A stretch of DNA of 64,000 nucleotides from Macrostomum lignano (Eukaryota): NCBI GenBank assembly GCA_002269645.1, contig NIVC01001356.1, positions 243,381-307,380 of the forward strand. Reading direction: 5' to 3'. Shown here piece by piece: positions 3,147-58,124 of the stretch (the first letter of the stretch is position 1; every line of letters begins with the position of its first letter). The position numbers and the translations under genes were made by a program. A model generated the notes under the pieces. The model searched no databases and was not told the DNA's origin. It saw only the letters and a list, made by a program, of their open reading frames with translations.

Positions 3147-3977
<831 letters not shown>

Positions 3978-8375: not shown

Positions 8376-8558
8376 TGTGGTAGCGTGGGTCTGCTCAATT
8401 GCTCCGCTTAGTGTAATGTACAGTGCAGGTGTACACCTGCACGCGCGCGTGTGATTGGCTGACGCTTTGTCAGACAACCTTTATTGTTGGCCAGCTATAT
8501 TAAATACAAGCTCTCTGCCTTGGGGGGGGGGTCTTACCCCCGAAGTGGAGTTTTCACA
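8376..8558 (+). repeat. 3' LTR of Mag-like element (183 bp)
   Basis: Copy of 3978-4158, preceded by the polypurine tract. Confidence 0.95.
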
Positions 8559-8894
<336 letters not shown>

Positions 8895-16519: not shown

Positions 16520-17334
16520 TCAGTTTCCCTGAGTCTCAATCGAGCACGCGAGAAGCTGATGCAGCTCGTAAAGGAAATCGAAAGCTACGAACAGACACGG
16601 CTCGGGAAGCGTCTGTGCACCATCGACCGCAGACTCCGCCTTCAACACTTTGCTGCCTGAAGCATCAGCCCAGAAGCCCTTCGTGTTGCTGCAGCATGAA
16701 ACCCAACCAGGCAAACGAGTCCTTGGATCTCGCTGTGGAACTCACAAATGCTCTGCTTCTCGCACAGCTGCATCACGTCCTTGAAATGCCGGTCGATGCT
16801 CAGCTGCAGGTCTCTCAGAGCTCCGCAAACGTCGCCCAGCTTCACTGGTCCTTGTTCGTCTTCGCTAGACACCGCGTCCTCGAGATCGCAGCACTCCAGC
16901 TCCATGCGCGAGGACAGCTCAAGGACGCTTCGAAGGTCGCTGGTGCTTTCCGCCGCTGCTATCGAGCTGTCGAACTTCTGCAGCACTGCAAAGTCGCTCA
17001 GCTTCTGCCTTGCTGCGTCAGTCCTGGCAGTGAGTCGACTCGTCACAGCTTCCTTGTGCTTCATCAGCGACTCAATGGCTTCATTGAGCAGATCCTCAGC
17101 CACCTGTAGCTCTGCTTCCAACACCTGCACGTCCGTTCTTAGACGGTCGCGGACGAGCCTCAGAGGCTGCAGCCTCGCCTCAACTCTGTCATGAATTTCA
17201 CGCACTCTGTCGGAGTCTCGGTCCAGGTGTCTCTGGCACAGAGGCTGCAGTGTCTGAGCTCCGATGCCAGAAGCTGCTTCGTTGCAGGTGGCCAGGGAGC
17301 AGCCCTGACTGCCTGCTTGAGTGGCTTCGGTCAT
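16520..17334 (-). pseudogene. ZnF-coiled-coil-NHL paralog A1 (class A), frameshifted and truncated in propeller blade 1
   Basis: ATG at 17334 (MTEATQ), C-x4-C-x15-C-x2-H, coiled coil; frameshift near 16710; homology stops after LLACSI, next to the Gypsy remnant. Confidence 0.85.
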
Positions 17335-19169
17335 GGCTCTTCTGAGCTGAAGCGGAGAGGTTGGGAGAAGCTGAGAGGCATTGTGAATTATATGCTCAGG
17401 AAATTGCAGAAGCTGCACTTTTACAAGCGTAGTCAGGTGGAGGGGCTCAGAAACTCATCTGGCCTAAAATAATGGGCTGAAGATCTCGTTGGAAATACCG
17501 ATCTCTTTCAATCATGACATACTCGTATTTTTTATTTTGTTCCCTACTAAAACTGAACATTCTGTCTCTCTCTCCTGCTGCTGCAGACGTAACTTGATAC
17601 TATGAGAATGAGAATTTTAGAGAAAATCCCATGATTAAACTTTAAATGATGACAGAAAAGTTGCAGTCGTCCTCCTTGCACACTAGTGAGTCTTCAGCAA
17701 AGTTAATTAATAAATATTGGGTTTGCTGCTCGCTAAAGGTTGGTCTGGTGTAGTTATTTAACCACTTAGCATTGATCCAGAACAGAGTAGGATAATCAAT
17801 ACGAATTTATACTGAGAGTCAGTACAGAGTTTAATATAAAACTCTGTACTGAGGTATTAGCTGACCTGCATACAAGAACAATAGTAAGCATTAAAAAGGT
17901 ACATAACTAAAAACATTTTAATCAAGCAATAAAAGTCAAAAGTGCAGTATAATTTGAACTTCTAACTTTTATATAGAATTTGGTGCAAGTAGCTATTTAG
18001 ATCTATTGGATTTTTCACTGATGACTTACTTTGTTTTCATTTTAAAAAACAAGCCACTTTCAATGCTTCAAAACCAGAAAATTTTCCATAAGTGTATTTA
18101 ACTAATTCCTAATTCATTTATGCTTACAGATAAATCGGAAATAAATACTGACCCATCTGTTTGTTCTGAGACACACTAAAACTTTAATACAATAAATTTT
18201 GTTTTTGTGTAAGGGTATTGGTATTGTAATTTTTACATTTGAATTGTAAGTTGAAGCAAGTTTACAGATTTATTGCAATTATTTGCATTTTGAAAATAAG
18301 TTAATTAAAAGCAAAGCTTATGCGTTGGATTGTGTCTGAGTCTGAGTTTTCTCTCTATTTGTTCCAAATTATAATTCGATTCATAACGCAGTCAAAGGTA
18401 AGGTAAGGTATATAAAACTTAATATTATTGTTCGGAATAAGTAATGGTATGCATGTCAGCATCGACACGTCGTATTGGCTATTTATTTTAGTTAGCAACG
18501 CGCATACTGCTTCCTTTAATATTCGCTCGTACATAGCCGTCTTTTCGAGTAAATATATAAATAAAACCACGACTAAGGTTTCAAGTTAAGCGCGTGCGCA
18601 ACATACACTAATGAAAACAGTGAATAAGTAAAACAAAAAATGATTATATATCGTTAATGTCTGTTAGTTCTTCAAGAGAGGTACAAGTGTAGCAATATAT
18701 TATTTTACTACCAGCAAATATAATTGAACGATACTCTTTAAAATACCTTTACAGTGCACTAACACTAACAAGGCAGAAGGCTTGGCTGCATGTGTGTGTT
18801 AAGAAATCGAACAAACACTTGAATGCTCATTTGTATGTGAAACTGGAGGATGTGCATGTACAATTGAATTTCCGTCTAATATGGTCGTTGTCGAGCTAGA
18901 TGTACATGTACACGTAATCCAATTCCTGCCAGTGAAATATATTTATTTGTTTGTACATGTACCCGTGGCAGTGAGCAGGGCCGTGTGGCCGGGACGGAGG
19001 GGTGAGCTTCTGCCGGGGCCGCCAAAAGCGAACCGACCAGCCCGCCGGCAGCATGGCCCCGCGTCTACGTCAGCAGCACGAACCTCAATTTCTGCAACGA
19101 GAGTAATACAACCTACGTTCGACAACGGGCGGTGGGCCCAAGTCATCGACATCCATGCACAATCGCATC

Positions 19170-22286: not shown

Positions 22287-23855
22287 ATGGCCGAAGCCAC
22301 TCAAGCAGGCAGTCAGCGCTGCTCCCTGGACACCTGCAGCGAAGCAGCTGCTGGCACTGGAGCTCAGACACCGCAGTCTCTGTGCCAGAGACACCTGGAC
22401 CAAGACTCCGACAGAGTGCACGAAATTCAAGCCAGAGTTCAGGCGAGGCTGCAGCCTCTGAGGCTCGTTCGCGACCGTCTAAGAATGGACGTGCAGGTGC
22501 TGGAAACGGAGCTGCAGGTAGCTGAGGATCTGCTCAATGCCGCCATTGAGTCATTGATGAAGCACAAGGAAGCTGTGACGAGTCGACTCAATACCAGAGC
22601 TGACGCAGCAAGGCAGAAGCTGAGCGACTTTGCAGTGCTGCAGGAGTTCGACAGCTCGATAGCAGCGGCGGAAAGCGCCAACAATCTTCGAGGCGTCTTT
22701 GAGCTGTCCTCTCGCATGGAGCTACAGTGCAGCGATCTCGAGAATGCGGTGTCTGGTGGAGACAAACAAGGACCAGTGAAGCTGGGCGACGTTTGCGGAG
22801 CTCTGAGAGACCTGCAGCTGAGCATCGAATGGCATTTTACGGACGTGATGCAGCTGTGCGACTCAGCTAATCCGCTGAGCGTAGAGAAGCTGAAAATTCG
22901 TAAGTTGCGCAGAGAGATCCAGGGGCTTGATGGTCATCCTGTTTGGGCTTCATACTGCAGCAACACGAAAGGCTTTTCCGCTGATGCTTCAGGCAGCAAA
23001 GTGGTGAAGGCGGAGTCTGCGGTCGATGGTGCACAGATGCTTCCCGAGCCGTGTCTGTTCGTAGCTTTTGATTTGCGATCCGATCTGGATTACCTTCTCG
23101 CGTGTTCGATTGGCAGATCCGTGAGGCTGAAAGTTCAAGCCGACCTCGACTGGTCCACGCCAATCACAGGACTCTGCTGTGACAACGAGCGCCAAGCTCT
23201 GTACATCTCGCAACAAAACTGGGTAAAGATGTCGGACCTGAGCGGTCAGGTGTCGCTCGAGATCAACTCGAGCAGCCTCGGACGGCCTGTCAGATTTATG
23301 GGGCTGACCTGCAGCTCTGACAAGATAATTTCTCTGGACAAAAGCGGCTCGGAAATGCAGCTGCTGTGCATCGACAAAGACAGCGGCCAGCTGCAGACCT
23401 GCGTTTCTCTCGGTGGCGTGCCCAGTTCCCCAGATCGCTCAGAATCCATGTCGGTCATCGACCATGCGGTGCTGATCACCGATTGGGAAGCTGACAAGCT
23501 CTACAAAGTTTGCATCGCCAGCGGTCAGCTGATCTTGACCTACCCGACCAAGCGAAGTCATCGTGATAAGCTTCGAAGTCCTGCAGGAGTCGTGGCTCAT
23601 CGCTCGGGTCTGCTGTTCGTCAGCGAGTGTATAAGTCATGTGGTTCGTGTGATGCGAAGTGACGGCACTGTGCTGCAGACTGTCGGAGTCGAGGGTGAGG
23701 CTGGCAGAGGCCGAGAGAAAATGAACGGTCCGTATGGCTTGGCCATCGTTGAAGGCGACTCCGAGTTTGCCGTGTGCCAGCGGGATGGTCATTCCATAAA
23801 TTTTTACGAATTTTATACTGGTCCTGATGTTCCTGACTTGTGTATTTTGTTGTAG
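22287..23855 (+). CDS. ZnF-coiled-coil-NHL protein A2 (class A, 522 aa), inverted relative to the rest of the array
   Basis: gagccATGG start at 22287 (the track uses an upstream GTG); CSLDTC...LCQRH; coiled coil; six propeller blades including [10 protein letters not shown]...LFVSE and MNGPYGLAI. Confidence 0.85.
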
Positions 23856-24273
23856 AGAGCTGGAGGCTAAAAAGCCTCAATAACCTACCGTAGGCCCGGT
23901 GCGATCGATTAATTTATATTTGTATATAACGGCGACTATGTAATTGAAAATGCGTACATCTGACACCCTGCGACGAAAGTACATTGGATGTAAATTGCAT
24001 GTTTACACCACGAGCATGCATAAGTCATTGCTATACCCTGCTACCAAGCATTAGGCAGTAGGCCCCTGCAATTCTCCCAAACCAGAGAGATTGGATAAAA
24101 ATAATAAACAAAATTTAAACACCCTAAAGCAATCAGGACGACCACAACACGTTCTTTTTGTAGTTGAGCACCCAGCCTTGGGAACCTCCAGGCTGCTGTC
24201 GCGTGGCGATATCACCGCTGGGTAGGCAGCTAGACAGGCTCTGGTAGTGGCAATCTAGTTTGAACAATTTGTA

Positions 24274-24370
24274 GGGCTTGGCCATCGTAGATTCAGAGCT
24301 GCTGCTTGCCTTGTGCCTAGGGGATAGAAATTTGATCAGGTTCTACCGGGTCTCAACTGGTTCTGCCGAT
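24274..24370 (+). pseudogene. Isolated C-terminal (blade 6) fragment of an NHL paralog
   Basis: [32 protein letters not shown] matches the family C-terminus. Confidence 0.7.
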
Positions 24371-26636: not shown

Positions 26637-28178
26637 TCACACATCAGGACCTGCAGTCGAAACTCGGTAAAGACTGATCGAATTTCTATCCGCTAGGCAC
26701 ACCGCTAGAAGCAGCTCTGAATCTCCGTCTAACATGGCCAAGCCATACGGATTGTCCATTTTGTCTCGGCCTCTGCCAGCCTCGCCCTCGACTCCGACAG
26801 TCTGCAGCACAGTGCCGTCACTACGCATCATTCGTACCACATGTCTACCAAACTCGCTGACGAACACCAGACCTAAGCGATGAGCTGCGACTCCTGCAGG
26901 ACTCCAAATCTTATCAAGACGACTTCGCTTGGTCGGGTAGGTCGAGATCAGCTGACCGCTGGCGATGCATACTTTGTACAGCTTGTCAGCTGTCCAATCG
27001 GTGATCAGCACTGCATGGTCGATGACAGACATGGCGTCCAAGTTATCTGTTAAACTGGGCACGCCACCGACAGAAACGCAGGTCTGCAGCTGGCCCCTGT
27101 CTTTGTCGATGCACAGCAGCTGCATTTCCGAGCCGCTTTTGTCCAGAGCAATTATCTTGTCAGAGCTGCAGGTCAGCCCAATAAAAATCACAGGCCGTCC
27201 GAGGCTGCTCGAGTTGATCTCAAGCGACACCTGACCGCTCAGGTCCGACACCTTCACACAGTTTATCTGCGAGACGTACAGAGCTTGGCGCTTGCTGTCA
27301 CAGCTGAGTCCTGTGATTGGCGTTGACAAGTCGAGGCCGGCTTGAACTTTCAGCCTCACGGATCCGTCAATCGAACACGCGAGAAGGTAATCCAGATCGG
27401 ATCCAAAAGTAAAAGCTACGAACAGACACGGCTCGGGAAGCATCTGTGCACCATCGACCGCAGACTCCGCCTTCACCACTTTGCTGCCTGAAGCATCAGG
27501 GGAGAAGCCCTTCGTGTTGCTGCAGCATGAAACCCAAACAGGCGAACTATCGAGTTCTTGGATCTCGCTGTGGAACTCACAAATGCTCTGCTTCTCCTCG
27601 CTCAGCGGACCAACACTCTCGCACAGCTGCATCACATCGCTCAGCTGCCTGTGAATCAGCAGCTGCAAGTCTCTCACGCCTCCGCTCACGTCGCCAATGT
27701 CTCTGCCGACTTGCTCAAAGCTGTCTCTCTTTTCATCCAAGTCGCCGCACTCCGCACTCACTGCAGCTGAGAGTGAGAGCAATGTCTTCAGGTCAGCATT
27801 GGCCTCAGCTTCAGTAAGGCCAATCTCATACTCCTGCAGCACTGACAGCTCATTCAGCTTCTGCAGGCTGCTCTCATGTCTCACAGTCAATCGGTTGAGC
27901 ACAGATTCCTTGTAGGTGAGCAGCGACTCCACAGCCGACTCGAACAGCTGCTCGATGCTCTGCAGCTCGGCTGCCAGCGCTCGCTGATGAACTCGAAGGC
28001 CGTCTCGCAGCCTCTTCAGCGGCTGCAGCTGCTCGAGCGCCTTCTGTGCGAGGTGGCGCACCGCGGCAGCGTCCTGAGCCAGGTGTCTCTCGCACAGTTG
28101 CTCTGAAAGGCGAACGCCGATTCCGGTCGGGGCAGCGCTGCAGCCTCTGATGAAGCAGCTCGTGCTGGAGTCGGACAT
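26637..28178 (-). CDS. ZnF-coiled-coil-NHL protein B1 (class B, 513 aa)
   Basis: Intact ORF: MSDSSTSCFIRGC...LCERH, coiled coil, six-blade propeller ([19 protein letters not shown]). Confidence 0.88.
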   Translation of the reverse strand: MSDSSTSCFIRGCSAAPTGIGVRLSEQLCERHLAQDAAAVRHLAQKALEQLQPLKRLRDGLRVHQRALAAELQSIEQLFESAVESLLTYKESVLNRLTVRHESSLQKLNELSVLQEYEIGLTEAEANADLKTLLSLSAAVSAECGDLDEKRDSFEQVGRDIGDVSGGVRDLQLLIHRQLSDVMQLCESVGPLSEEKQSICEFHSEIQELDSSPVWVSCCSNTKGFSPDASGSKVVKAESAVDGAQMLPEPCLFVAFTFGSDLDYLLACSIDGSVRLKVQAGLDLSTPITGLSCDSKRQALYVSQINCVKVSDLSGQVSLEINSSSLGRPVIFIGLTCSSDKIIALDKSGSEMQLLCIDKDRGQLQTCVSVGGVPSLTDNLDAMSVIDHAVLITDWTADKLYKVCIASGQLISTYPTKRSRLDKIWSPAGVAAHRLGLVFVSEFGRHVVRMMRSDGTVLQTVGVEGEAGRGRDKMDNPYGLAMLDGDSELLLAVCLADRNSISLYRVSTAGPDV

Positions 28179-29805: not shown

Positions 29806-31353
29806 TCAATCGGCCGAAACAGTTGAAACTCTGTAAATACTGATGGACTTTCCTTCCTTCTGGCACACGGCAAGCAGCTCGGAGTCGCCTTCAACGGTGG
29901 CCAAGCCATACGGACAGTTCATTTTGTCTCGGCCGCTGCCAGCCTCATTATCGACTCCGACAGTCTGCAGCACAGTGCCGTCACTACGCATCAAACGAAC
30001 CACATGACTAATGCACTCGCTGACGAACAGCAGACCCGAACGATGAGCTGCGACTCCTGTAGGACTCCAAATCTTATTAAGACGACTTCGGCTTGTAGGG
30101 TAGGTCGAGATCAGCTGACCGCTGGCGATGCACACTTTATAGAGCTTGTCAGCTGTCCAATCAGTGATCAGCACTGCATGGTCGATGCCCGATATGGCTT
30201 CTGAATGATCTGGTGAACTGGGAACCCCACCGACAAAAACGCAGGTCTGCAGCTGGCCGCTGTCTTTGTCGATGCACAGCAGCTGCATTTCCGAGCCGCT
30301 TTTGTCCAGAGCAATTATCTTGTCAGAGCTGCAGGTCAGCCCCATAAATCTGACAGGCCGTCCGAGGCTGCTTGAGTTGATCTCGAGCGACACCTGACCG
30401 CTCAGGTCCGACACCTTGACCACGTTTTTCTGCGAGATGTACAGAGCTTGGCGCTTGCTGTCACAGCTAAGTCCTGTGATTGGCTTGGAGTCGAGGTCGG
30501 CTTGAACTTTTACCCTCACTGATCCGTCAATCGAACACGCGAGAAGGTGATTCAGATTGGAACGCAAATCAAAAGCAACGAACAGACACGGCTCAGGAAG
30601 CATCTGTGCACCATCGACCGCAGACTCCGCCTTCACCACTTTGCTGCCTGAAGCATCAGCGAAGAAGCCCTTCGTGTTGCTGCAGCATGAAATTCGAATA
30701 GGATGACCATCGAGTTCTTGGATCTCGCTGTGGAACTCACAAATGCTCTGCTTCTGCTCGCTTAACGGACCAGCACTCTCGCACAGCTGCATCACATCGC
30801 TCAGCTGTCTGTCAATCAGCAGCTGTAAGTCCCTCAAAGCTCCGCAAACGTCGCCCAGCTTCAGTCGTCCTTGTTCGTCTCCACCAGACACCGCGTCCTC
30901 GAGATCGCTGCACTGCAGCTCCATGCGAGAGGACAGCTCAAAGACGCCTCGAAAGTCGCTGGCGCTTTCCGCCGCTGCTATCGAGCTGTCGAACTCCTGC
31001 AACACTGCAAAGTCGCTCAGCTTCTGCCTTGCTGCGTCAGTCTTGGCATTGAGTCGACTCATAACAGCTTCCGTGTGCTTCATCAGTGACTCAATGGCGG
31101 CATTGATCAGATCCTCAGCCACCTGCAGCTCCGCTTCCAGCGCCTGCACGTCTGTTCGCAGACGGTCGCGGACGAGCCTTAAGGGCTGCAGCCTCGCCTC
31201 AACTCTGGCGTGAATTTCGCGCACTCTGTCGGAGTCTTGGTCCAGGTGTCTCTGGCACAGAGGCTGCGTTGTCTGAGCTCCGGTGCTAGAAGCTGCTTCG
31301 TTGCAGGTGGCCAGGGAGCAGCGCTGACTGCCTGCTTGAGTGGCTTCGGTCAT
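29806..31353 (-). CDS. ZnF-coiled-coil-NHL protein A3 (class A, 515 aa)
   Basis: Intact ORF from ATG 31353 (MTEATQ); same domain layout. Confidence 0.88.
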   Translation of the reverse strand: MTEATQAGSQRCSLATCNEAASSTGAQTTQPLCQRHLDQDSDRVREIHARVEARLQPLRLVRDRLRTDVQALEAELQVAEDLINAAIESLMKHTEAVMSRLNAKTDAARQKLSDFAVLQEFDSSIAAAESASDFRGVFELSSRMELQCSDLEDAVSGGDEQGRLKLGDVCGALRDLQLLIDRQLSDVMQLCESAGPLSEQKQSICEFHSEIQELDGHPIRISCCSNTKGFFADASGSKVVKAESAVDGAQMLPEPCLFVAFDLRSNLNHLLACSIDGSVRVKVQADLDSKPITGLSCDSKRQALYISQKNVVKVSDLSGQVSLEINSSSLGRPVRFMGLTCSSDKIIALDKSGSEMQLLCIDKDSGQLQTCVFVGGVPSSPDHSEAISGIDHAVLITDWTADKLYKVCIASGQLISTYPTSRSRLNKIWSPTGVAAHRSGLLFVSECISHVVRLMRSDGTVLQTVGVDNEAGSGRDKMNCPYGLATVEGDSELLAVCQKEGKSISIYRVSTVSAD

Positions 31354-33904
31354 GGCTCTTCTGAGCAGAAAGGGAGAGGTTGGAGAAGCTGCGGCATTGT
31401 GGACCGTGTGCTCAGGGAACTGCAGAAGCTGCACTTTTAGTCAGATGGAGGACCTTAGGAAGTAATTTTGGACAGTGATAGTAAATTTGGCCTAAAGGGC
31501 TGATTAGAAATATCGATCTCTTCCAATCATGGTATAATTTGATTCAAACTTTGCTACTGAAATGATTATTTTCTATCCATATTTTTTAAATATCCTCCAT
31601 AATTAATTTAACCTTCTAGGGTATGCCATCTACATCTACACATATTTGAGAACATTTGGCCAGCTTTTACTGAAAAAACTTTTAAATTTAATTCGATAAG
31701 TTAGAGGAAGTCTTTGTTTAAAATTTAAATGTTTCAGTGGTACCACTTGGAGACTAGCGAGACTTCAGCAAAGTCAATCGACTGCAGACAGGCTATAATA
31801 TAAAGACCAAGTTAGTAAATTATTCAAACCTAAATATAGGAAATTTAAATGATAAAAATATTGGAATATTTTTACTAAATTGGTGCAATGTGTCTTTACC
31901 TTGGGCTGCATAAAAACGCTAATTTACTGACCAAGGCAATAGTAAAAATAATAAGTTATTATTATCAGTAAACATTTCTTATCAAGTAATTAAGAGTCAA
32001 AAAAGTGTAGCACAGTTGAAAATTTCTCAGCAAGAATTTTTTACACGTGTATTTGTTTTGTTTCAAAGAAAAGAAAGTCAGTATTCGAGAGTGTTGTTTT
32101 ACAACTCATTTATGCACACTGATTGGGTCACTATTAACTTGTTATCATTTAGACTAACACTAATGCTAAAATTGTTTCGTTTAAATTTCATAATTACGAA
32201 AAAGAAACATTATACACTTTTTGTAATATTTCATATTGTAACGATACGATAAGTCAATTAAGAACGCTAAGCTTATGCGCTGGATTTTGTCCTAGTTCAC
32301 TTTAAAATACCAGTCCGTTCAAAATTATAATTTGCTTCATAACGCAGTCAAAGGTTAATTTTGACATATAAAGTAATTTCTTGGTTCCAAACTCGAAACG
32401 GAGAAAAATAAATTAATAATTTTATTTAATTTGTAATAGTTTGTAGTCAGCAACATACATACTGTAATTTTAAATATATAATCCTTGGATTTCGGTTAAA
32501 TATTCGAATAATTTTAATCTCAAAAAAGGATCATGTTAAATACGTGCGCTCTAATAAAGCAGATATGAGTAAAACAAAAATTTAAACTCCTATAGATTTG
32601 CACGTCTGTATACAGGTATAGCAACATTTTTACTTGTGCAGAATTCGCACTTTTCGCACCAACAAGTCAAAGGCTTTACCTGCAATGTGTAAAAAATCGG
32701 ACAGACATTGGACTCAGTGGACTGTAAATTTGTGTGAGGAACTGGTGGATGTAAATGTACATTTGTTTTGACGTCTAATAATGTTCTTTGTCTAGCTACA
32801 TGTAATGGAATTCCATCCAGTGAAATGTTTACTTAAACAATTTACATATGCATGTAAGGACCAGTAGCAAAAGACAGAAAAACGGAGAGAATACGAGAGG
32901 ATTGATTTGACTGAGCTGGTAGAAAAGATCAGGGAAGAAAGAGCTCCAATACCAGCGCCCGAGAGGAGCCAATCAGCTGTCAGCAGCTCTCGATCATCCA
33001 ATTCATTCGAGACAGGCAAAGACAGGCACAGACAGCGTACATGTACGAAGCCCCAGAAGGAGGAACGAGCAAACATTCGAAAAGCATCAAAAAAGGTTTC
33101 ACTTTTCTCAGCTCAGCCTTCCGCCGCTCAAGGATGTCCCTCCACAGCCCCCCTCAGCGATTTCAACCGACACCGATGATCACTGCTCACCCTTCGTTTC
33201 CTGCTCTAGAGATGTCGAGCAGCAGTCCCTACGAACTCCCCATCGCCTGCTGCTCGCCTCGCCCAGCTCCCTACTTGCCGACTACGTGACCTTCGTCAAT
33301 GCGGCCATCTTCGCCCGTCTTCCGTCGCGACCACAGCGTCCACCGCGTCTCGGAAGCGTGAGTCACTGAGACAATCATTCCTCCCGATATCTACCTCAGC
33401 AACCTCTGGGCTCTGGCGCTGAAAGGTACAGCCACCAGGCCTCGTCCCTATAGACTTTGTCCGCCTCTGGATGGTGCGATCCCATGGTGAGATACCATTA
33501 TCTAGGCAGCGAGCCGGGTTGTTTTAAGGTACACGCCAAAGGCGCGGCCGCCACCAGTCAACTGTGCAGGAGTCACCCTATGAAAATCCCACTAAAGAGA
33601 CGGGACTACCGGTCTGGAACAGACGAAGGTTCTTGGCCCCAACTCTACTAAAAATGGCCGATTGAGGGACTCTATGCGAGGCATATATACAAGGATCAGT
33701 CTAGTCAGTGCTGGAAACGAGGACTTTTGCATAGGGGGTCTTTTAGCTGTTGAGCAAAAAGACTACAATTACCTCATAAGCCCCAGGATTCCAAGTGTTA
33801 ATAGTTAATTAACAAATTGCATGTACGTCATCATGTTTACGTAATCACATCGGATGAGGATAGACGTCGGTTGGGACTGCAGCTGAGAATAACCAGGAGT
33901 TGAA

Positions 33905-34930: not shown

Positions 34931-35002
34931 CAGTCAGTCTCTAAATCACTTGGTCAGTCACTAAATCACTTGGTCAGTCACTAAATCACTTGGTCGGTCA
35001 CT
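34931..35002. repeat. 20-bp tandem repeat (ggtcagtcactaaatcactt, about 3.5 units) spanning the pol stop codon
   Basis: Seen directly. Confidence 0.85.
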
Positions 35003-39251: not shown

Positions 39252-39399
39252 TCTTGTAAATAAATAAGAATGATATTGATTGTCCAAGGCTCCAAACTGA
39301 GCCAAAACCAAGAAAACAAGTATCGCCCTCTGGCGCGCACCAGGTCTATTTATAGACTTATCAAAAATGGGGTGGCACAAAGAAAAGTCCACCGTCACA
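39244..39399 (-). repeat. 5' LTR of Gmr1-like element
   Basis: tgtgacggtg...gaatgcaaca on the minus strand. Confidence 0.93.
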
Positions 39400-42809: not shown

Positions 42810-42935
42810 TCACACATCAGGACCTGCAGTCGAAACTCGGTAAAGACTGATCGAATTTCTATTCGCTAGGCACACCGCTAGAAGCAGCTCTGAATCTCTG
42901 TCTAACATGACCAAGCCATACGGATTGTCCATTTT
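42810..42935 (-). pseudogene. Orphan B1-type C-terminal fragment just downstream of B2
   Basis: [39 protein letters not shown] is nearly identical to the B1 end (26637-26760) and has the same 3' flank. Confidence 0.8.
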
Positions 42936-43033
42936 GTCCATTTTGTCCATTTTGCATAAAAATAGTACATTGTGATAAAGCAAAAACATGCAGATTCAGA
43001 GCTGAATCGAAAGGTGATTTACAGTCATCTGTG

Positions 43034-44511
43034 TCACACGGCAGAACCAGTTGAAACTCGGTAAAATCTGATGGACAGTCCTTCCTGCTGGCACACGGCA
43101 AGCAGCTCGGAGTCGCCTTCAACGATGGTCAAGCCATACGGACGGTTCATTTTGCCTCTGCTGTTGCCAGCCTCACCCTCGACTCCGACAGTCTGCAGCA
43201 CAGTGCCGTCACTTCGCATCACACGAACCACATGCCTAAAACACTCGCTAAGGAACACCAGACCCGAGCGATGAGCAGCGACTCCTGCGGGTCTCTGAAG
43301 CTTATCAAGACGACTTCGCTTGGTCGGGTAGGTCGAGATCAGCTGACCGCTGTCAATGCACACTTTGCAGAGCTTGTGAGCTTCCCATTCAGTGATCAGC
43401 ACCGCATGGTCGATGACTGACATGGATTCTATGTAATCTGGGGAACTGGGCACGCCCCCGACAGAAACGCAGGTCTGCAGCTGGCCGCTGTCTTTGTCGA
43501 TGCACAGCAGCTGCATTTCCGAGCCGCTTTTGTCCAGAGCAATTATCTTGTCAGAGCTGCAGGTCAGCCCCATAAATCTGACAGGCCGTCCGAGGCTGCT
43601 CGAGTTGATCTTGAGCGACGCCTGACCGCTCAGGTCCGACACCTTCACACAGTTTTCTTGCGAGATGTACAGAGCTTGGCGCTTGCTGTCCCAGCAGAGT
43701 CCTGTGATTGGCGTGGACCGGTCGAGATGGGCTTGAACTTTCAGCCTCACGGATCCGTCAATCGAACACGCGAGAAGGTAATCCAGATCGGATCCAAAAG
43801 TAAAAGCTACGAACAGACACGGCTCGGGAAGCATCTGTGCACCATCGACTGCAGACTCCGCCTTCACCACTTTGCTGCCTGAAGCATCAGCGGAGAAGCC
43901 CTTCGTGTTGCTGCAGCATGAAATCCAAACAGGCGAACCATCGAGTCCCTGGATCTCGCTGTGGAACTCACAAATGCTCTGCTTCTCGCTCAGCGGGCCG
44001 GCACTCTCGCATAGCTTCATCACATCGCTCAGTCTCTGCCGACTTGCTCAAAGCTGTCTCTCTTTTCATCCAAGTCGCCGCACTCCGCACTCACTGCAGC
44101 TGAGAGTGAGAGCAATGTCTTCAATTCAGCATTGGCCTGAGCTTTAGTGAGGCCAATCTCATACTCCTGCAGCACTGACAGCTCATTCAGCTTCTGCAGG
44201 CTGCTCTCATGTCTCACAGTCAATCGGTTGAGCACAGATTCCTTGTAGGTGAGCAGCGACTCCACAGCCGACTCGAACAGCTGCTCGACGCTCTGCAGCT
44301 CGGCTGCTAGCGCTCGCTGATGAACTCGAAGGCCGTCTTGCAGACTCTTCAGCGGCTGCAGCTGCTCGAGCGCCTTCTGTGCGAGGTAGCGCACCGCGGC
44401 AGCGTCCTGAGCCACGTGTCTCTCGCACAGGGGCTCTGGGAGGCGAACGCCGGTACCGGTCGGGGCAGCGCTGCAGCCTCTGATGAAGCAGCTCGAGCTC
44501 GAGTCGGACAT
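43034..44511 (-). pseudogene. ZnF-coiled-coil-NHL paralog B2 (class B), frameshifted by a 55-nt deletion near 44030
   Basis: ATG at 44511; ORFs 44029-44550 and 43034-44023. Relative to B1, the stretch attggcgacg...caggcagc (55 nt) is missing. Confidence 0.85.
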
Positions 44512-46205: not shown

Positions 46206-47741
46206 TCAATAGGCAGACCCAGTTGACACTCTGTAAAATCTGATGGACTTTCCATTCGGTTGGCAGACGGCAAGCAGCTCTGAGTCGCCTTGAACGATTG
46301 CCAAGCCACATGGATTGTCCATTCTATCTTCGCCACTGCCGGCCTCACCCTCGACTCCAACAGTCTGCAGCACAGTGCCGTTACTTTGCATCACACGAAC
46401 CACATCCCTTAACAACTCGCTGACAAACACCAGACCCGAGCGATGAGCCGCGACTCCTGTAGGACTCAGAAGCTTATCAAGACGACTTCGCTTGGTCGGG
46501 TAGGTCGAGATCAGCTGACCGCTGGCGATGCACACTTTGTAGAGCTTGTCAGCTGTCCAATCGGTGATCAGCACCGCATGGTCATAAAAAGACATGGATT
46601 CTGAGCGATCTGAAAACACAGGCACGTCACTGATAGAAATGCAGGACTGCAGCTGGCCGCTGTCTTTGTCGATGCACAGCAGCTGCATTTCCGAGCCGCT
46701 TTTGTCCAGAGCAATTATCTTGTCAGAGCTGCAGGTCAGTCCCATAAATCTGACAGGCCGTCCGATGCTGCTCGACTCCATCTCAAGCGATACCTGACCG
46801 CTCAGGTCCGACGCCTTCACCCAGTTTTTTTGCGAGATGTACAGAGCTTGGCGCTTGCTGTCACAGCAAAGTCCTGTGATTGGCTTGGACCAGTCGAGGT
46901 CGGCTTGAACTTTCAGCCTCACGGATCCGTCAATCGAACACGCGAGAAGGTAATCCAAATCATCAAACGATACGACCAGACACAGCTCGGGAAGCATCTG
47001 TGCCGCATCGACTGCAGGCTCCGCCTTCACCACTTTGCTGCCTGAAGCATCAGCGGAGAAGCCCTTCGTGTTGCTGGAGCATGAAATTAATTTAGGTTTA
47101 CCATTGAGTTCTTGGATCTCGCTGTGAAACTCACAAATGTTCAGCTCGCTCAGCAGACCAGCTGACTCGCACAGCTTCATTGCATCCTCAAAATGCCTGT
47201 CGATGCTCAGCTGCAAGTCTCTCAGAGCTCCGCAAACGTCGCCCAGCTTCACTTGTCCTTGTTCGTCTTCGCTAGACACCGCGTCCTCGAGATCGCAGCA
47301 CTCCAGCTCCATGCGCGAGGACAGCTCAAGGGCGCCTCGAAGGTCGCTGGCGCTTTCCGCCGCTGCTATCGAGCTGTCGAACTCCTGCAGCACTGCAAAG
47401 TCGCTCAGCTTCTGCCTTGCTGCGTCAGTTCTGGCAGTGAGTCGACTCGTCACAGCTTCCTTGTGCTTCATCAGCGACTCAATGGCGGCATTGAGCAGAT
47501 CCTCAGCCACCTGTAGCTCTGCTTCCAACACCTGCACGTCCATTCTTAGACGGTCGCGGACGAGCCTCAGAGGCTGCAGCCTCGCCTCAACTCTGTCATG
47601 AATTTCACGCACTCTGTCGGAGTCTCGGTCCAGGTGTCTCTGGCACAGAGGCTGCGGTGTCTGAGCTCCGATGCCAGAAGCTGCTTCGTTGCAGGTGGCC
47701 AGGGAGCAGCCCTGACTGCCTGCTTGAGTGGCTTCGGTCAT
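46206..47741 (-). CDS. ZnF-coiled-coil-NHL protein A4 (class A, 511 aa)
   Basis: Intact ORF from ATG 47741; same domain layout; N-terminal half nearly identical to A1. Confidence 0.88.
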   Translation of the reverse strand: MTEATQAGSQGCSLATCNEAASGIGAQTPQPLCQRHLDRDSDRVREIHDRVEARLQPLRLVRDRLRMDVQVLEAELQVAEDLLNAAIESLMKHKEAVTSRLTARTDAARQKLSDFAVLQEFDSSIAAAESASDLRGALELSSRMELECCDLEDAVSSEDEQGQVKLGDVCGALRDLQLSIDRHFEDAMKLCESAGLLSELNICEFHSEIQELNGKPKLISCSSNTKGFSADASGSKVVKAEPAVDAAQMLPELCLVVSFDDLDYLLACSIDGSVRLKVQADLDWSKPITGLCCDSKRQALYISQKNWVKASDLSGQVSLEMESSSIGRPVRFMGLTCSSDKIIALDKSGSEMQLLCIDKDSGQLQSCISISDVPVFSDRSESMSFYDHAVLITDWTADKLYKVCIASGQLISTYPTKRSRLDKLLSPTGVAAHRSGLVFVSELLRDVVRVMQSNGTVLQTVGVEGEAGSGEDRMDNPCGLAIVQGDSELLAVCQPNGKSIRFYRVSTGSAY

Positions 47742-49920
47742 TGCTCTTCTGAGCTGAAGCGGAGAGGTTGGGAGAAGCTGAGAGGCATTGTGAATTATAT
47801 GCTCAGGAAATTGCAGAAGCTGCACTTTTACAAGCGTAGTCAGGTGGAGGGGCTCAGAAACTCATCTGGCCTAAAATAATGGGCTGAAGAGCTCGTTGGA
47901 AATACCGATCTCTTTCAATCATGACATACTCGTATTTTTTATTTTGTTCCCTACTAAAACTGAACATTCTGTCTCTCTCTCCTGCTGCTGCAGACGTAAC
48001 TTGATACTATGAGAATGAGAATTTTAGAGAAAATCCCATGATTAAACTTTAAATGATGACAGAAAAGTTGCAGTCGTCCTCCTTGCACACTAGTGAGTCT
48101 TCAGCAAAGTTAATTAATAAATATTGGGTTTGCTGCTCGCTAAAGTTTGGTCTGGTGTAGTTATTTAACCACTTAGCATTGATCCAGAACAGAGTAGGAT
48201 AATCAATACGAATTTATACTGAGAGTCAGTACAGAGTTTAATATAAAACTCTGTACTGAGGTATTAGCTGACCTGCATACAAGAACAATAGTAAGCATTA
48301 AAAAGGTACATAACTAAAAACATTTTAATCAAGCAATAAAAGTCAAAAGTGCAGTATAATTTGAACTTCTAACTTTTATATAGAATTTGGTGCATATACC
48401 TTTTAGATCTATTGGATTTTTCACTGATGACTTTGTTTTCATTTTAAAAACAAGCCACTTTCAATGCTTCAAAAACCAGAAAATTTTCCATAAGTGTATT
48501 TAACTAATTCCTAATTCATTTATGCTTACAGATAAATCGGAAATAAATACTGACCCATCTGTTTGTTCTGAGACACACTAAAACTTTAATACAATAAATT
48601 TTGTTTTTGTGTAAGGGTATTGTAAATTTTTACATTTGAATTGTAAGTTGAAGCAAGTTTACAGATTTATTGCAATTATTTGCATTTTGAAAATAAGTTA
48701 ATTAAAAGCAAAGCTTGGATTGTGTCTGAGTCTGAGTTTTCTCTCTATTTGTTCCAAATTATAAATCGATTCATAACGCAGTCAAAGGTAAGGTAAGGTA
48801 TATAAAACTTAATATTATTGTTCGGAATAAGTAATAGTATGCATGTCAGCATCGACACGTCGTATTGGCTATTTGTTTTAGTTAGCAACGCGCATACTGC
48901 TTCCTTTAATATTCGCTCGTACATAACCGTCTTTTCGAGTAAATATATAAATAAAACCACGACTAAGGTTTCAAGTTAAGCGCGTGCGCAACATACACTA
49001 ATGAAAACAGTGAATAAGTAAAACAAAAAATGATTATATATCGTTAATGTCTGTTAGTTCTTCAAGAGAGGTACAAGTGTAGCAATATATTATTTTACTA
49101 CCAGCAAATATAATTGAACGATACTCTTTAAAATACCTTTACAGTGCACCAACACTAACAAGGCAGAAGGCCTGGCTGCATGTGTGTGTTAAGAAATCGA
49201 ACAAACATTTGAATTTGAATGCTCATTTGTATGTGAAACTGGAGGATGTGCATGTACAATTGAATTTCGTCTAATATGGTCGTTGTCCAGCTAGATGTAC
49301 ATGTACACGTAAACCAATTCCTGCCAGTGAAATATATTTATTTGTTTGTACATGTACCCGTGGCAGTGAGCAGGGCCGTGTGGCCGGGACGGAGGGGTGA
49401 GCTTCTGCCGGGGCCGCCAAAAGCGAACCGCCCAGCCCGGCAGCATGTCCCCGCGTCTACGTCAGCAGCACGAACCTCAATTTCTGCAACGAGAGTAATA
49501 CAACCTACGTTCGACAACGGGCGGTGGGCCCAAGTCATCGACATCCATGCACAATCGCATCACCTGCTGGACTGCTATTCACAGTCACAGGCGAGTGTGG
49601 GACGAGGACTCGCTCTCGGACCATCGTTTTATCCTCTTTTGCATCGGGCTGACCAAGCAAAAGCCGAAGGTCACCTGGAGCCGGAACTTCAGGAATACCC
49701 AAGCGATCAACGAGTTTAAAAGTCAAGTCAGAGGGCCAAGACGGCCGACCATGTGGCGCCAATAGTGCGGAGGGCTAATTGATGTCACTCAACCTGTAGC
49801 CCGAGTGGTAAACAGCACTCACGAGTGACCGTTTTTAAACTCTGTTGAGGAAGAAACCTGATATCGCTATTTCATTAAGAACTCTGCAGAGACGGCCTAC
49901 AGACCTCATGGTCGAATCCT
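47200..49920. repeat. Recent segmental duplication, near-identical to ~16800-19520
   Basis: Gene 5' half, about 1.5 kb of AT-rich upstream DNA and the LINE fragment are collinear, with only scattered substitutions and small indels. Confidence 0.9.
49563..49765 (+). mobile_element. Duplicate of the APE-endonuclease LINE fragment
   Basis: RVWDEDSLSDHRFILFCIGL, as at 19170-19380. Confidence 0.65.
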
Positions 49921-56588: not shown

Positions 56589-58124
56589 TCACACAGCAGA
56601 ACCAGTTGAAACTCGGTAAAGACTGATGGAATCTCTATTCGGTTGGCACACGGCAAGCAGCTCGGAGTGGCCTTCAACGATGGCCAAGCCACACGGATTG
56701 TGCATTCTGTCCCCGCAACTGCCAGCCTCACCCTCGACTCCGACAGTCTGCAGCACAGTGCCGTCACTACGCATCATTCGTACCACATGCCTATCAAACT
56801 CGCTGACGAACAACAGACCTAAGCGATGAGCTGCGACTCCTGCAGGACTCTGAAGCTCATCAAGACGACTTCGCTTGGTCGGGTAGGTCGAGATCAGCTG
56901 ACCGCTGGCGATGCACACTTTGTAGAGCTTTTGAGCTTCATAATCAGTGATCAGCACCGCATGGTCAATGACCGATGTGGATTCGTAGAAGTTATTAATA
57001 GAAGGCACGCAACCGACGAAAATGCAGGTCTGCAGCTGGCCGCTGTCTTTGTCGATGCACAGCAGCTGCATTTCCGAGCCGCTTTTGTCCAGAGCAATTA
57101 TCTTGTCAGAGCTGCAGGTCAGCCCCATAAATCTGACAGACCGTACGCCGAGGCTGCTCGAGTTGAACTCGAGTGAAACCTGACCGCTCAGGTCCGACAC
57201 CTTGACCACGTTTTTCTGCGAGATGTACAGAGCTTGGCGCTTGCTGTCACAGCTGAGTCCTGTGATTAGCTTGGACCAGTCGAGGTCAACCCGAACTTTC
57301 AGCCTCACGGATCCGTCAATCGAACACGCGAGAAAATAATGTAGTTTTGATAGTGGATAAAAAGCTACAAACAGACACGGCTCGGGAAGCATCTGTGCAC
57401 CATCGACCGCAGACTCCGCCTTCACCACTTTGCTGCCTGAAGCATCAGGGGAGAAGCCCTTCGTGTTGCTGCAGCATGAAACCCAATCAGGCGAACCATC
57501 GAGTCCCTGGATCTCGCTGTGGAACTCACAAATGCTCTGCTTCTCGCTCAGCGGACCAACACTCTCGCACAGCTGCATCACATCGCTCAGCTGCCTGTCA
57601 ATCAGCAGCTGCAAGTCTCTCACGCCTCCGCTCACGTCGCCAATGTCTCTGCCGACTTGCTCAAAGCTGTCTCTCTTTTCATCCAAGTCGCCGCACTCCG
57701 CACTCACTGCAGCTGAGAGTGAGAGCAATGTCTTCAGGTCAGCATTGGCCTCAGCTTCAGTAAGGCCAATCTCATACTCCTGCAGCACTGACAGCTCATT
57801 CAGCTTTTGCAGGCTGCTCTCATGTCTCACAGTCAATCGGTTGAGCACAGATTCCTTGTAGGTGAGCAGCGACTCCACAGCCGACTCGAACAGCTGCTCG
57901 ACGCTCTGCAGCTCGGCTGCTAGCGCTCGCTGATGAACTCGAAGGCCGTCTCGCAGACTCTTCAGCGGCTGCAGCTGCTCGAGCGCCTTCTGTGCGAGGT
58001 GGCGCACCGCGGCAGCGTCCTGAGCCAGGTGTCTTTCGCACAGGGGCTCTGGGAGGCGAACGCCGGTGCCGGTCGGGACAGCGCTGCAGCCTCTGATGAA
58101 GCAGCTCGGGCTCGAGTCAGACAT
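56589..58124 (-). CDS. ZnF-coiled-coil-NHL protein B3 (class B, 511 aa)
   Basis: Intact [16 protein letters not shown]...LCERH; six-blade propeller. Confidence 0.88.

What the first reader, a model, noticed from the sequence alone, without database searches (positions are those of the whole stretch)
22900..23820. Hypervariable residues cluster in the predicted top-face loops of the propeller
Across A2/B1/A3/B2/A4/B3, strands and bottom turns are near-invariant ([27 protein letters not shown] is identical in five of six). The loops before strand a and between strands b and c differ in almost every copy: [37 protein letters not shown]; SQQNW/SQINC/SQKNV/SQENC/SQKNW; [48 protein letters not shown]; KLRSP/KIWSP/KLQRP/KLLSP/ELQSP; SECISH/SEFGRH/SECFRH/SELLRD/SEFDRH; MNGPY/MDNPY/MNCPY/MNRPY/MHNPC; QRDGH/LADRN/QKEGK/QQEGL/QPNGK/QPNRD (seen). 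These loop classes form the ligand/RNA-binding top face in NHL propellers such as Brat and LIN-41 (established). The inference is diversifying selection on one binding surface.
Basis: partly seen in the sequence, partly recalled or inferred. Interest (0 to 1): 0.8.

Follow-up and report, generated by a model that had tools for sequence, protein, structure and literature searches.

The report
Flatworm NHL propellers with variable top face
A tandem family of flatworm (Macrostomum lignano) genes encodes NHL-type beta-propellers whose framework is kept almost identical between copies by DNA exchange while the loops on one face differ in nearly every copy, which looks like a set of binding specificities, although selection for diversity is not proven.

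Summary
Window 22908-23852 encodes the C-terminal six-bladed NHL-type propeller of one gene (A2). It belongs to a tandem, intronless, Macrostomum lignano-specific family with a zinc knuckle, a coiled coil and an NHL propeller. All quoted strings are present.

Variable residues concentrate in the b-c and d-a loops, which define the top face. Variable columns number 55/92 in top loops, 14/56 in bottom loops and 50/145 in strands (Fisher, top vs bottom, 4e-5). A second, independent gene cluster shows the same pattern (p 2e-5).

The "invariant" framework is also invariant at silent sites. Silent diversity falls about 7-fold with distance from hypervariable codons, and recombination tests are positive. 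The framework therefore reflects concerted evolution as well as purifying selection.

Evidence for dN/dS above 1 depends on the model:
- As a class, top loops run at about the neutral rate (omega 1.06 and 0.74; 0-fold/4-fold 1.29, CI 0.89-2.04).
- Site models give strong signals with one tree, partitioned trees or local silent rates.
- With free per-site rates the signal drops to p=0.036, or 0.17 for both clusters jointly.

Selection for diversity (about 0.45) and plain lack of constraint on loops that escape homogenisation (about 0.38) both remain open. No ligand is known, and RNA binding is not indicated.

The parts
22287..23855 (+). Gene A2 (ORF open from GTG 22203; probable ATG at 22287): N-terminal C-x4-C-x15-C-x2-H knuckle, coiled coil, C-terminal NHL-type propeller
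22908..23852 (+). Propeller-coding part of A2 (residues 236-550), the region of the finding; modelled as a six-bladed propeller
   Evidence: AF2 pLDDT 83.6, pTM 0.85; Foldseek NHL domains of TRIM3/TRIM2/Thin/TRIM71
23070..23093 (+). Top loop Ib-Ic (A2 290-297, DLRSDLDY), hypervariable, carries a 3-codon deletion in A4
23136..23162 (+). Top loop Id-IIa (A2 312-320, QADLDWSTP), variable
23214..23222 (+). Top loop IIb-IIc and first residue of strand IIc (A2 338-340, QNW), hypervariable
23424..23447 (+). Top loop IIId-IVa (A2 408-415, SSPDRSES), the most variable loop (pN 0.40)
23484..23495 (+). Top loop IVb-IVc (A2 428-431, WEAD), variable
23544..23579 (+). Top loop IVd-Va (A2 448-459, [12 protein letters not shown]), variable at its C-terminal end (KLRS)
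23628..23639 (+). Top loop Vb-Vc (A2 476-479, CISH), hypervariable
23685..23729 (+). Top loop Vd-VIa (A2 495-509, [15 protein letters not shown]), variable in its second half
23781..23792 (+). Top loop VIb-VIc (A2 527-530, RDGH), hypervariable (pN 0.48)
22959..22997 (+). Conserved top loop VId-Ia (A2 253-265, [13 protein letters not shown]); the S-N/D-T-x-GF motif is kept in distant family members
23295..23396 (+). Homogenised framework core (A2 365-398): one synonymous variant in 34 codons across six copies; contains a 52-nt run identical in all six
26637..28178 (-). Paralogue B1 (513 aa, intact)
29806..31434 (-). Paralogue A3 (intact; probable ATG at 31353)
43034..44490 (-). Paralogue B2: propeller ORF 43034-44023 intact, N-terminal half out of frame (deletion/frameshift near 44032-44071)
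46206..47825 (-). Paralogue A4 (intact; probable ATG at 47741)
56589..58124 (-). Paralogue B3 (511 aa, intact)
59848..61357 (-). Copy B4, several frameshifts (pseudogene, or errors of this assembly; its counterpart in L002 is also broken)
62871..64000 (-). Copy A5, runs off the window, frameshifted here; the NCBI counterpart P0001 (L002:10001-11551) is intact
16535..17418 (-). Truncated A-type copy A1 (N-terminal half and the start of the propeller only)
42813..42938 (-). B1-like relic of the last blade, about 95 nt downstream of the B2 stop codon, followed by B1-like 3' flank
24260..24370 (+). Relic of a last-blade/C-terminal segment about 400 nt downstream of the A2 stop

Best explanation
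The finding lies in the C-terminal NHL-type six-bladed propeller of one member of a tandemly arrayed, intronless gene family found only in Macrostomum lignano. Each protein has a short Cys/His knuckle, a long coiled coil and the propeller. Distant family members are named RING-type or B-box-type by UniProt, so the family looks like a RING-less derivative of TRIM-NHL proteins.

Two processes shape the paralogues. First (shown): non-reciprocal DNA exchange, meaning gene conversion or segment replacement, keeps the propeller framework almost identical between copies, silent sites included, and even between A-type and B-type genes whose N-terminal halves are saturated with silent differences. Second (shown): short patches encoding the b-c and d-a loops, the top face, stay different between copies, and silent diversity peaks right next to them.

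My preferred reading (inferred) is that the paralogues form a repertoire of binding specificities. Exchanges that overwrite a loop patch are selected against, or new loop variants are favoured, so one face diversifies on a homogenised scaffold. Exchange also reshuffles loop patches between genes.

The coiled coil probably makes dimers that present two propellers (inferred from TRIM architecture). The ligand is unknown. The uncharged top loops give no indication of RNA binding.
For: Fold and family:
- (NHL domain)
- (helices 30-126, 130-144, 147-188)
- (about 20 full-length relatives below 50% identity, all M. lignano, sharing the N-terminal C...C...C-x2-H motif; distant ones named RING-type or B-box-type).

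Concerted evolution:
- N-terminal dS between A and B is about 1.1, but propeller dS is about 0.2 for every pair.
- Silent diversity at amino-acid-invariant codons falls from 0.177 (1-2 codons from a hypervariable codon) to 0.026 (more than 10 codons away), perm p=0.0005. In the second cluster it falls from 0.229 to 0.087, p=0.008.
- The same framework silent sites differ at 0.29 between clusters.
- PHI p=0.0005 in both clusters.
- 3' flanks are mostly unalignable.
- An A-type last blade is inserted ahead of a B1-like relic at B2.

Top-face bias:
-, two independent clusters.
- Candidate omega>1 sites: 18 in top loops, 6 in strands, 0 in bottom loops (Fisher 6e-6).

Selection signal:
- M1a/M2a 2dlnL is 77 on one tree, 50/42/26.5 with 3/6/10 separately treed partitions, and 59-79 with local silent rates.
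- The code was checked on 12 simulations under M1a (maximum LRT 4.1).
- Strands (omega 0.39) and bottom loops (0.35) are constrained, and three top loops are conserved, so the proteins and part of the top face are under selection.
Against: - Omega for top loops as a class is about 1 (1.06 and 0.74; 0-fold/4-fold 1.51, 1.10, pooled 1.29 with CI 0.89-2.04).
- With free per-codon rate classes the test for omega>1 is weak (p=0.036) or absent (joint p=0.17).
- The second cluster alone gives p=0.21 under plain M1a/M2a.
- The radical/conservative ratio is about 1.
- Third-position diversity at hypervariable codons fits simulated fast neutral sites.
- Homeologous or allelic pairs also show a neutral-like N/S ratio in top loops (21/7), though several of those copies are pseudogenes.
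- No expression, ligand or function data exist.
- Faces were assigned by topology, not coordinates.
- The likelihood code is my own, not PAML or HyPhy.
Confidence: 0.45

Rival explanations
1. Relaxed constraint without adaptive diversification. The top-face loops are simply not needed for function. They drift at the neutral rate and, once diverged, block or escape gene conversion, which needs near-identical sequence. The constrained framework stays similar enough to keep being homogenised, silent sites included. The hypervariable patches would then be old neutral islands, not a selected repertoire.
For: - Omega is about 1 in top loops at all depths.
- The radical/conservative ratio is about 1.
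- A model of fast neutral sites (14% of codons at 3.8x rate, omega<=1) fits better than M2a (lnL -3233.4 vs -3243.0) and nearly as well as its own omega>1 extension.
- That model reproduces third-position diversity.
- In-frame indels sit in these loops.
- Homology also ends abruptly in the unconstrained 3' flanks, the same behaviour on a larger scale.
Against: - Replacement rates at about 6% of codons exceed the silent rate of their immediate neighbours several-fold, and they survive partitioning by segment.
- Three top loops are strongly conserved family-wide, so the top face is not generally dispensable.
- It is unclear what a propeller maintained under omega 0.35-0.39 would do if about 60 residues of its main interaction face were irrelevant.
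- Many paralogues are kept intact.
Confidence: 0.38
2. A mutational origin. The clustered differences, silent and replacement together, are introduced by short conversion tracts from more divergent family members or spare blade relics, or by a local error-prone process. They persist only where the protein tolerates them.
For: - Silent and replacement differences co-cluster.
- Many hypervariable codons differ at 2-3 positions.
- B3's Ib-Ic loop shares states with the other cluster (P291, K294, CTA295).
- Relic last-blade segments lie downstream of B2 and A2.
- Loop motifs are shared in mosaic fashion between A and B genes.
Against: - No donor matching any whole patch was found among the 12 aligned copies.
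- Conversion from functional paralogues should also import silent differences into strands, which are nearly free of them.
- No targeted hypermutation system is known for such genes in animals (own knowledge).
- This explains the supply of variants, not why they are kept on one face only.
Confidence: 0.1
3. Artefact. The variable patches are products of assembly indel errors (compensated frameshifts) or of misalignment.
For: - This assembly differs from the NCBI assembly by 39 gap openings in 5 kb.
- Copies A5 and B4 are frameshifted.
Against: - Only 1 of 85 patch comparisons fits better in a shifted register.
- Patch differences are substitutions of equal length.
- The same pattern is seen in P0001 and in the second cluster, both from a different assembly.
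Confidence: 0.02

Closest known systems
Podospora anserina NWD/HNWD genes (het-d, het-e, het-r): WD40 propellers of fungal NLR-like allorecognition proteins (PMC1805685, PMC2873952)
   Same: A beta-propeller whose repeats or framework undergo concerted evolution within and between paralogous loci. A few positions on the interaction (top) surface are hypervariable, and exchange reshuffles variants. Pseudogene copies lie nearby.
   Different: In Podospora the units exchanged are individual WD40 repeats inside NACHT-domain NLR-like proteins, repeat number varies, and four positions per repeat pass dN/dS tests. Here the propeller is NHL-type with a fixed six blades and sits behind a coiled coil. 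Exchange is between whole paralogous propellers or blade segments. dN/dS above 1 is model-dependent, and no recognition function is known.
TRIM5alpha, TRIM22 and the fish finTRIM, btr and trim35/hltr multigene families: B30.2/SPRY variable loops (PMC3137616, PMC3845644)
   Same: Lineage-specific tandem expansions of TRIM-type proteins (coiled coil plus a C-terminal binding domain). Variation concentrates in the surface loops of the binding domain. Recombination between paralogues had to be controlled for in those studies too.
   Different: Those families keep RING and B-box domains, use a B30.2 beta-sandwich rather than an NHL propeller, have introns, and show positive selection that survives PARRIS/GARD controls. 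Here RING is absent, the B-box is at most a remnant, and the selection test is not robust.
Canonical TRIM-NHL proteins: Brat, LIN-41/TRIM71, Mei-P26, NHL-2, TRIM2/3, Thin/TRIM32 (PMC4015489, PMC5908797, PMC9634614)
   Same: Closest sequence and fold relatives of the propeller. The coiled coil precedes the NHL domain. The top face (b-c and d-a loops) is the ligand or RNA-binding face in these proteins.
   Different: Canonical members are single-copy, slowly evolving developmental regulators with RING and B-box domains and an electropositive top face. These genes are multi-copy and restricted to one flatworm lineage. They lack RING, miss the Pfam NHL threshold, and have top loops with net charge about 0.

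Membership tests
NHL-repeat six-bladed beta-propeller | Significant sequence similarity to NHL domains of known structure | tested here: met
   phmmer against PDB: Thin 1.2e-11, TRIM71 2e-07, TRIM2 3e-06, Brat 4e-03. Family profile: Thin 9e-11, TRIM71 3e-09.
NHL-repeat six-bladed beta-propeller | Match to the Pfam NHL repeat model (PF01436) above its gathering score | tested here: not met
   No Pfam family for A2, B1 or A4 at E<=1 apart from chance hits. A distant relative, P0028, scores 19.8 bits against a cut-off of 20.
NHL-repeat six-bladed beta-propeller | Six blades of four antiparallel strands; fold closest to solved NHL domains | tested here: met
   The AF2 model shows 24 strands in the a-d register, with the N-terminal strand 246-252 as strand d of blade VI (blade assignment inferred). 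The top 12 Foldseek hits are NHL domains of TRIM3, TRIM2, Thin and TRIM71, TM 0.62-0.76. This is a prediction, not an experimental structure.
TRIM-NHL (RING, B-box, coiled coil, NHL) | N-terminal RING finger | tested here: not met
   Only about 30 residues precede the coiled coil in B-type genes. There is no Pfam RING hit. RING-type is a UniProt name for distant family members only (P0169, P0170).
TRIM-NHL (RING, B-box, coiled coil, NHL) | B-box zinc finger | tested here: inconclusive
   A conserved C-x4-C-x15-C-x2-H motif (C-x2-C-x12-17-C-x2-H in distant members) could bind one zinc. There is no Pfam B-box hit. B box-type is a UniProt name for P0041 only.
TRIM-NHL (RING, B-box, coiled coil, NHL) | Long coiled coil between the N-terminal module and the NHL domain | tested here: met
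   AF2 model of B1 residues 1-205: helices 30-126, 130-144 and 147-188, pLDDT 77. Foldseek gave no significant match, so similarity to TRIM coiled coils in particular is not shown.
RNA-binding TRIM-NHL domains (Brat, LIN-41) | Electropositive top surface | tested here: not met
   Net charge of all top-loop residues is -6 to +3 in twelve copies, and of bottom loops -2 to -6. This is a crude count without a surface calculation. The criterion comes from PMC4015489.
Diversified recognition repertoires (NWD WD40, TRIM B30.2 type) | Hypervariable residues confined to the interaction surface of the binding domain | tested here: met
   Top against bottom loops: 55/92 vs 14/56 and 53/92 vs 12/56 in two clusters. 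Candidate sites: 18 top, 6 strand, 0 bottom.
Diversified recognition repertoires (NWD WD40, TRIM B30.2 type) | Concerted evolution or recombination between paralogues | tested here: met
Diversified recognition repertoires (NWD WD40, TRIM B30.2 type) | dN/dS above 1 at the variable sites, robust to recombination and rate heterogeneity | tested here: inconclusive
   Significant on one tree, with partitions and with local silent rates. It is p=0.036 and p=0.17 with free per-site rates. Class-wide ratios are 0.74-1.5, with confidence intervals that include 1.
Diversified recognition repertoires (NWD WD40, TRIM B30.2 type) | Demonstrated recognition function (ligands, immunity or allorecognition phenotype) | not testable with these tools
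   No paper mentions these genes or an NHL family in Macrostomum.

The most novel reading that the evidence does not exclude
Macrostomum lignano carries an NHL-propeller-based recognition repertoire. Dozens of RING-less TRIM-NHL-like genes sit in tandem arrays, and gene conversion keeps a common scaffold while shuffling top-face loop cassettes between genes. Spare blade relics next to the genes could serve as donors. This would generate and maintain many binding specificities, for example against viruses, transposon products or non-self. It would be an animal counterpart of the fungal NWD WD40 system, built on a different propeller.
Probability: 0.3. Interest if true: 0.8.

Novelty: new variant of a known kind. 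Interest (0 to 1): 0.55.

Why it matters
If the top-face diversity is functional, this would be the first NHL propeller used as a diversified recognition module. It would also be a new case of the 'homogenised scaffold plus hypervariable surface' design known from fungal WD40 NLRs and vertebrate TRIM B30.2 families, in a regenerating flatworm model whose innate immunity is almost undescribed.

It is also a caution about method. Standard site models gave p around 1e-17 here, yet most of that signal can be absorbed by rate heterogeneity created by gene conversion. If the loops are merely unconstrained, the locus is still a clean example of how conversion tracks constraint at the scale of a few codons.

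Tried and rejected
- Pfam on A2, B1, A4 and the B1 N-terminus gave no meaningful family. Pfam on eight distant relatives gave only a sub-threshold NHL hit.
- Foldseek of the N-terminal model found nothing significant (best E 1.2), so likeness to TRIM coiled coils could not be tested by fold.
- The word-indexed protein search found only 8-9 proteins, even with a profile. The exhaustive search was needed; its first job was lost.
- I looked for frameshift or misalignment artefacts behind the patches and rejected them.
- I expected third codon positions at hypervariable codons to be unusually conserved, which would have favoured selection. Simulation shows they are not.
- Strand residues nearer the top are not more variable than those nearer the bottom (24/68 vs 22/68).
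- The radical/conservative replacement test was uninformative (about 1).
- Homeologue comparison had too few changes, and several of those copies are pseudogenes.
- 3' and 5' flanks could not serve as a general neutral yardstick because most pairs are unalignable.
- The cluster around P0010/P0011 (L005) was fetched as a third replicate, but its copies are too divergent for silent-site analysis.
- A first joint likelihood run timed out, and one script call returned no answer.
- Literature searches for the genes or for an NHL family in Macrostomum found nothing.
Full report
**What is there**

The window is eukaryotic DNA with LTR retrotransposons and microsatellites. Its best protein matches are hypothetical proteins of the flatworm Macrostomum lignano.

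It carries a tandem array of intronless genes of about 510-550 codons:
- Intact: A2 (22203-23855, +), B1 (26637-28178, -), A3 (29806-31434, -), A4 (46206-47825, -) and B3 (56589-58124, -).
- B2 (43034-44490, -) has an intact propeller ORF but an out-of-frame N-terminal half.
- Broken or truncated: A1 (16535-17418), B4 (59848-61357) and A5 (62871-64000).
- Two short relics of the last blade lie at 24260-24370 and 42813-42938.

A-type and B-type genes alternate as two-gene duplication units: A3-B1, A4-B2 and A5-B4. The finding's coordinates are the propeller-coding part of A2.

**What the protein is**

Pfam finds nothing. HMMER against PDB sequences matches the C-terminal 300 residues to the NHL domains of Thin/TRIM32 (1.2e-11), TRIM71, TRIM2/3 and Brat (profile search).

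An AlphaFold2 model of A2 residues 236-550 has pLDDT 83.6 and pTM 0.85. Its best Foldseek matches in the PDB are the NHL domains of TRIM3, TRIM2, Thin and TRIM71, TM 0.62-0.76.

The N-terminal 200 residues are predicted as one 97-residue helix plus two shorter ones, typical of a coiled-coil hairpin. They are preceded by a conserved C-x4-C-x15-C-x2-H motif.

An exhaustive profile search found about 20 further full-length relatives below 50% identity, all from M. lignano. The most distant are named RING-type or B box-type by UniProt. I read the family as a lineage-specific, RING-less offshoot of TRIM-NHL proteins. RING is absent, the B-box is unproven, and the Pfam NHL threshold is not reached.

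**Check of the observation**

All quoted strings are present.

I classed residues before looking at variability. Strands were taken from DSSP of the model and ordered a-d using the NHL repeat register. That register is confirmed for blades III-VI by the residue-by-residue alignment to TRIM71 and Thin. Faces follow the published definition: b-c and d-a loops are top, a-b and c-d loops are bottom (PMC4015489).

| Class | Six window copies + P0001: variable columns | Same: columns with 3 or more residues | Second cluster (L001): variable columns |
|---|---|---|---|
| Top loops | 55/92 | 26/92 | 53/92 |
| Strands | 50/145 | 15/145 | 61/145 |
| Bottom loops | 14/56 | 2/56 | 12/56 |

For the first set, Fisher top vs bottom is 4e-5 for variable columns and 1.5e-4 for columns with 3 or more residues. 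The second cluster consists of five paralogues on another contig (L001, NIVC01000989.1). It is 48% identical to the window genes and gives p 2e-5.

Hypervariable columns also cluster along the sequence. The observation therefore holds, with three caveats:
- A third of strand columns vary.
- Three top loops (253-265, 356-364, 380-383) are conserved.
- Faces come from topology, not coordinates.

**The framework is homogenised, not only conserved**

The codon table shows that the invariant stretches are invariant at synonymous sites too. Codons 365-398 carry a single silent variant in six copies, and one 52-nt run is identical in all six.

Pairwise Nei-Gojobori estimates give dS of about 1.1 between the A and B N-terminal halves, but about 0.2 for the propeller in every pair, A-B pairs included.

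At codons whose amino acid never varies, the fraction of copy pairs with different codons depends on the distance to the nearest hypervariable codon:

| Distance (codons) | Window cluster |
|---|---|
| 1-2 | 0.177 |
| 3-5 | 0.107 |
| 6-10 | 0.075 |
| more than 10 | 0.026 |

The permutation p is 0.0005. The second cluster falls from 0.229 to 0.087 (p=0.008).

Between the two clusters the same framework silent sites differ at 0.29, so there is no nucleotide-level constraint. PHI tests detect recombination in both clusters (p=0.0005), and 55% of informative site pairs are incompatible. Homology mostly ends at the stop codon.

At B2, an A-type last blade plus about 80 nt of 3' UTR sits in front of a B1-like last-blade relic and B1-like flank. 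This is a fossil of segment replacement, with an end point in the V-VI top loop.

**Is there an excess of replacement change?**

By class, no.

| Measure | Top loops | Strands | Bottom loops |
|---|---|---|---|
| Omega, window cluster | 1.06 (0.73-1.58) | 0.39 | 0.35 |
| Omega, second cluster | 0.74 (0.49-1.19) | 0.40 | 0.25 |
| 0-fold/4-fold, window cluster | 1.51 (0.94-2.83) | 0.41 | 0.36 |
| 0-fold/4-fold, second cluster | 1.10 (0.61-2.31) | 0.54 | 0.24 |
| 0-fold/4-fold, pooled | 1.29 (0.89-2.04) | 0.49 | 0.29 |

By site, I wrote a Goldman-Yang codon likelihood. It recovers its parameters and gives LRTs of at most 4.1 in 12 null simulations. Results for the test of omega above 1:

| Analysis | 2dlnL | p |
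|---|---|---|
| One tree, M1a/M2a | 77 | 2e-17 |
| One tree, M7/M8 | 78.6 | 8e-18 |
| 3, 6, 10 segments, each with its own tree and branch lengths | 50, 42, 26.5 | at most 1.7e-6 |
| Branch lengths scaled by local silent rate (neighbours within 3 or 6 codons) | 78.7, 59.3 | at most 1e-13 |
| Same, second cluster | 13.0, 8.7 | 0.0015, 0.013 |
| Free per-codon overall rate class (3 classes), window cluster | 6.7 | 0.036 |
| Same, both clusters sharing site classes | 3.6 | 0.17 |

On one tree, about 7.5% of sites have omega about 7.

The free-rate null, without any omega above 1, fits better than M2a (lnL -3233.4 vs -3243.0). Simulations from that 'fast neutral sites' null reproduce the third-position diversity seen at hypervariable codons.

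Radical and conservative replacements are equally frequent in top loops. Homeologous pairs between two contigs of the NCBI assembly show N/S of 21/7 in top loops, against 22/26 in strands and 6/7 in bottom loops. That is again neutral-like, but the numbers are small and several of these copies are pseudogenes.

Wherever sites are flagged, they lie on the top face: 18 in top loops, 6 in strands and none in bottom loops.

**Reading**

Two things are shown: concerted evolution of the propeller framework, and persistence of short divergent patches that encode top-face loops.

Why the patches persist is not settled. One possibility is that selection keeps or promotes different loops, giving a repertoire of specificities. 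This resembles the fungal NWD WD40 genes (PMC1805685) or the TRIM B30.2 families (PMC3137616). The other is that the loops are unconstrained, drift apart, and then escape conversion because conversion needs near-identity. The 3' flanks and the A/B N-terminal halves have evidently done exactly that.

- Part of the top face is strongly conserved.
- The proteins are clearly under selection.
- Many copies are kept intact.
- Replacement rates at a few codons (412, 413, 458, 477, 530 and others) exceed the silent rate of adjacent codons.

The margin is small: 0.45 against 0.38. A purely mutational origin (0.1) and an artefact (0.02) are less likely.

The top loops carry no net positive charge.

**Novelty**

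No paper in the searchable library mentions these genes or an expanded NHL family in Macrostomum. The design, a homogenised scaffold with a hypervariable interaction face, is known. An NHL propeller in that role, in a flatworm, is not. I therefore rate it a new variant of a known kind, conditional on the diversity being functional.

Noticed in passing
window 26637-28178, 56589-58124 against 22203-23855, 29806-31434, 46206-47825: A-type and B-type genes have N-terminal halves saturated with silent differences (dS about 1.1, about 45% amino-acid identity). Their propellers are as similar as within a type (dS about 0.2). B1 and B3 show the reverse: N-terminal dS 0.05, propeller dS 0.20. The two halves of the gene have different histories.
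   Followed up: partly
window 42813-42938 (-) and 24260-24370 (+): Spare last-blade segments lie just downstream of B2 and A2. At B2 the relic is 93% identical in protein to the B1 C-terminus and continues into B1-like 3' flank. The functional last blade and about 80 nt after its stop are A-type. The junction falls in the V-VI top loop (KMDNPY). These relics could be leftovers of segment replacement or possible conversion donors.
   Followed up: partly
window 22959-22997 (A2 residues 253-265): One top loop, [13 protein letters not shown], is invariant in the window copies. Its core (S-N/D-T-x-GF) is kept in family members below 50% identity (CCNTSGF, CPDSSGF, CSDTSGF). It may be a common functional site next to the ring closure.
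   Followed up: no
window 28064-28157 (B1 residues 8-32) and the equivalent in all copies: A conserved C-x4-C-x15-C-x2-H motif lies at the N-terminus (C-x2-C-x12-17-C-x2-H in distant relatives). It could be a single zinc site and a remnant of a B-box. There is no Pfam hit.
   Followed up: partly
window 59000-64000 against L002 (NIVC01004574.1): This stretch is 97% identical to the NCBI Mlig_3_7 contig, with 53 mismatches and 39 gap openings in 5 kb. A5 is frameshifted here but intact there (P0001). Either this is another haplotype or subgenome copy, or this assembly carries indel errors. Pseudogene calls for A5, B4 and B2 should be treated with care.
   Followed up: partly
window 23809-23855 (A2 residues 536-550): A2 has an aberrant C-terminus ([15 protein letters not shown] instead of RVSTGSAV). 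It also has several private replacements in otherwise invariant turns (G304, R305, N328, E329, S377). It may be the most derived or a decaying copy.
   Followed up: no
window 4190-8113 (+): An intact 1307-codon ORF of a Ty3/gypsy-type LTR retrotransposon (zinc knuckle, aspartyl protease, RT, RNase H, integrase).
   Followed up: partly
window 34961-39398 (-): A second retroelement with two overlapping ORFs. The pol has integrase ahead of RT-RNase H (order PR, IN, RT, RH) and a SCAN-like segment at the gag-pol junction. It lies between the A3-B1 and A4-B2 gene pairs.
   Followed up: partly
window 3088-4056 and 8484-8900: Long microsatellite-like tracts that read as SIYL or SL repeats in ORFs. 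ORF 8484-10112 continues into a unique 400-residue part with no Pfam match.
   Followed up: no
window 12754-13368 (+): An ORF with a fucosyltransferase N-terminal domain (PF17039, 1e-13). It is probably one exon or a fragment of a glycosyltransferase gene.
   Followed up: no
L001 (NIVC01000989.1) and L003/L004 (NIVC01003604.1): The second cluster exists as two syntenic copies, 95-99% identical, on different contigs of the NCBI assembly. Their differences are themselves clustered (for example C1 codons 149-160 and 271-293), as expected from conversion between neighbouring paralogues. C3 and its counterpart each carry a different in-frame stop.
   Followed up: partly
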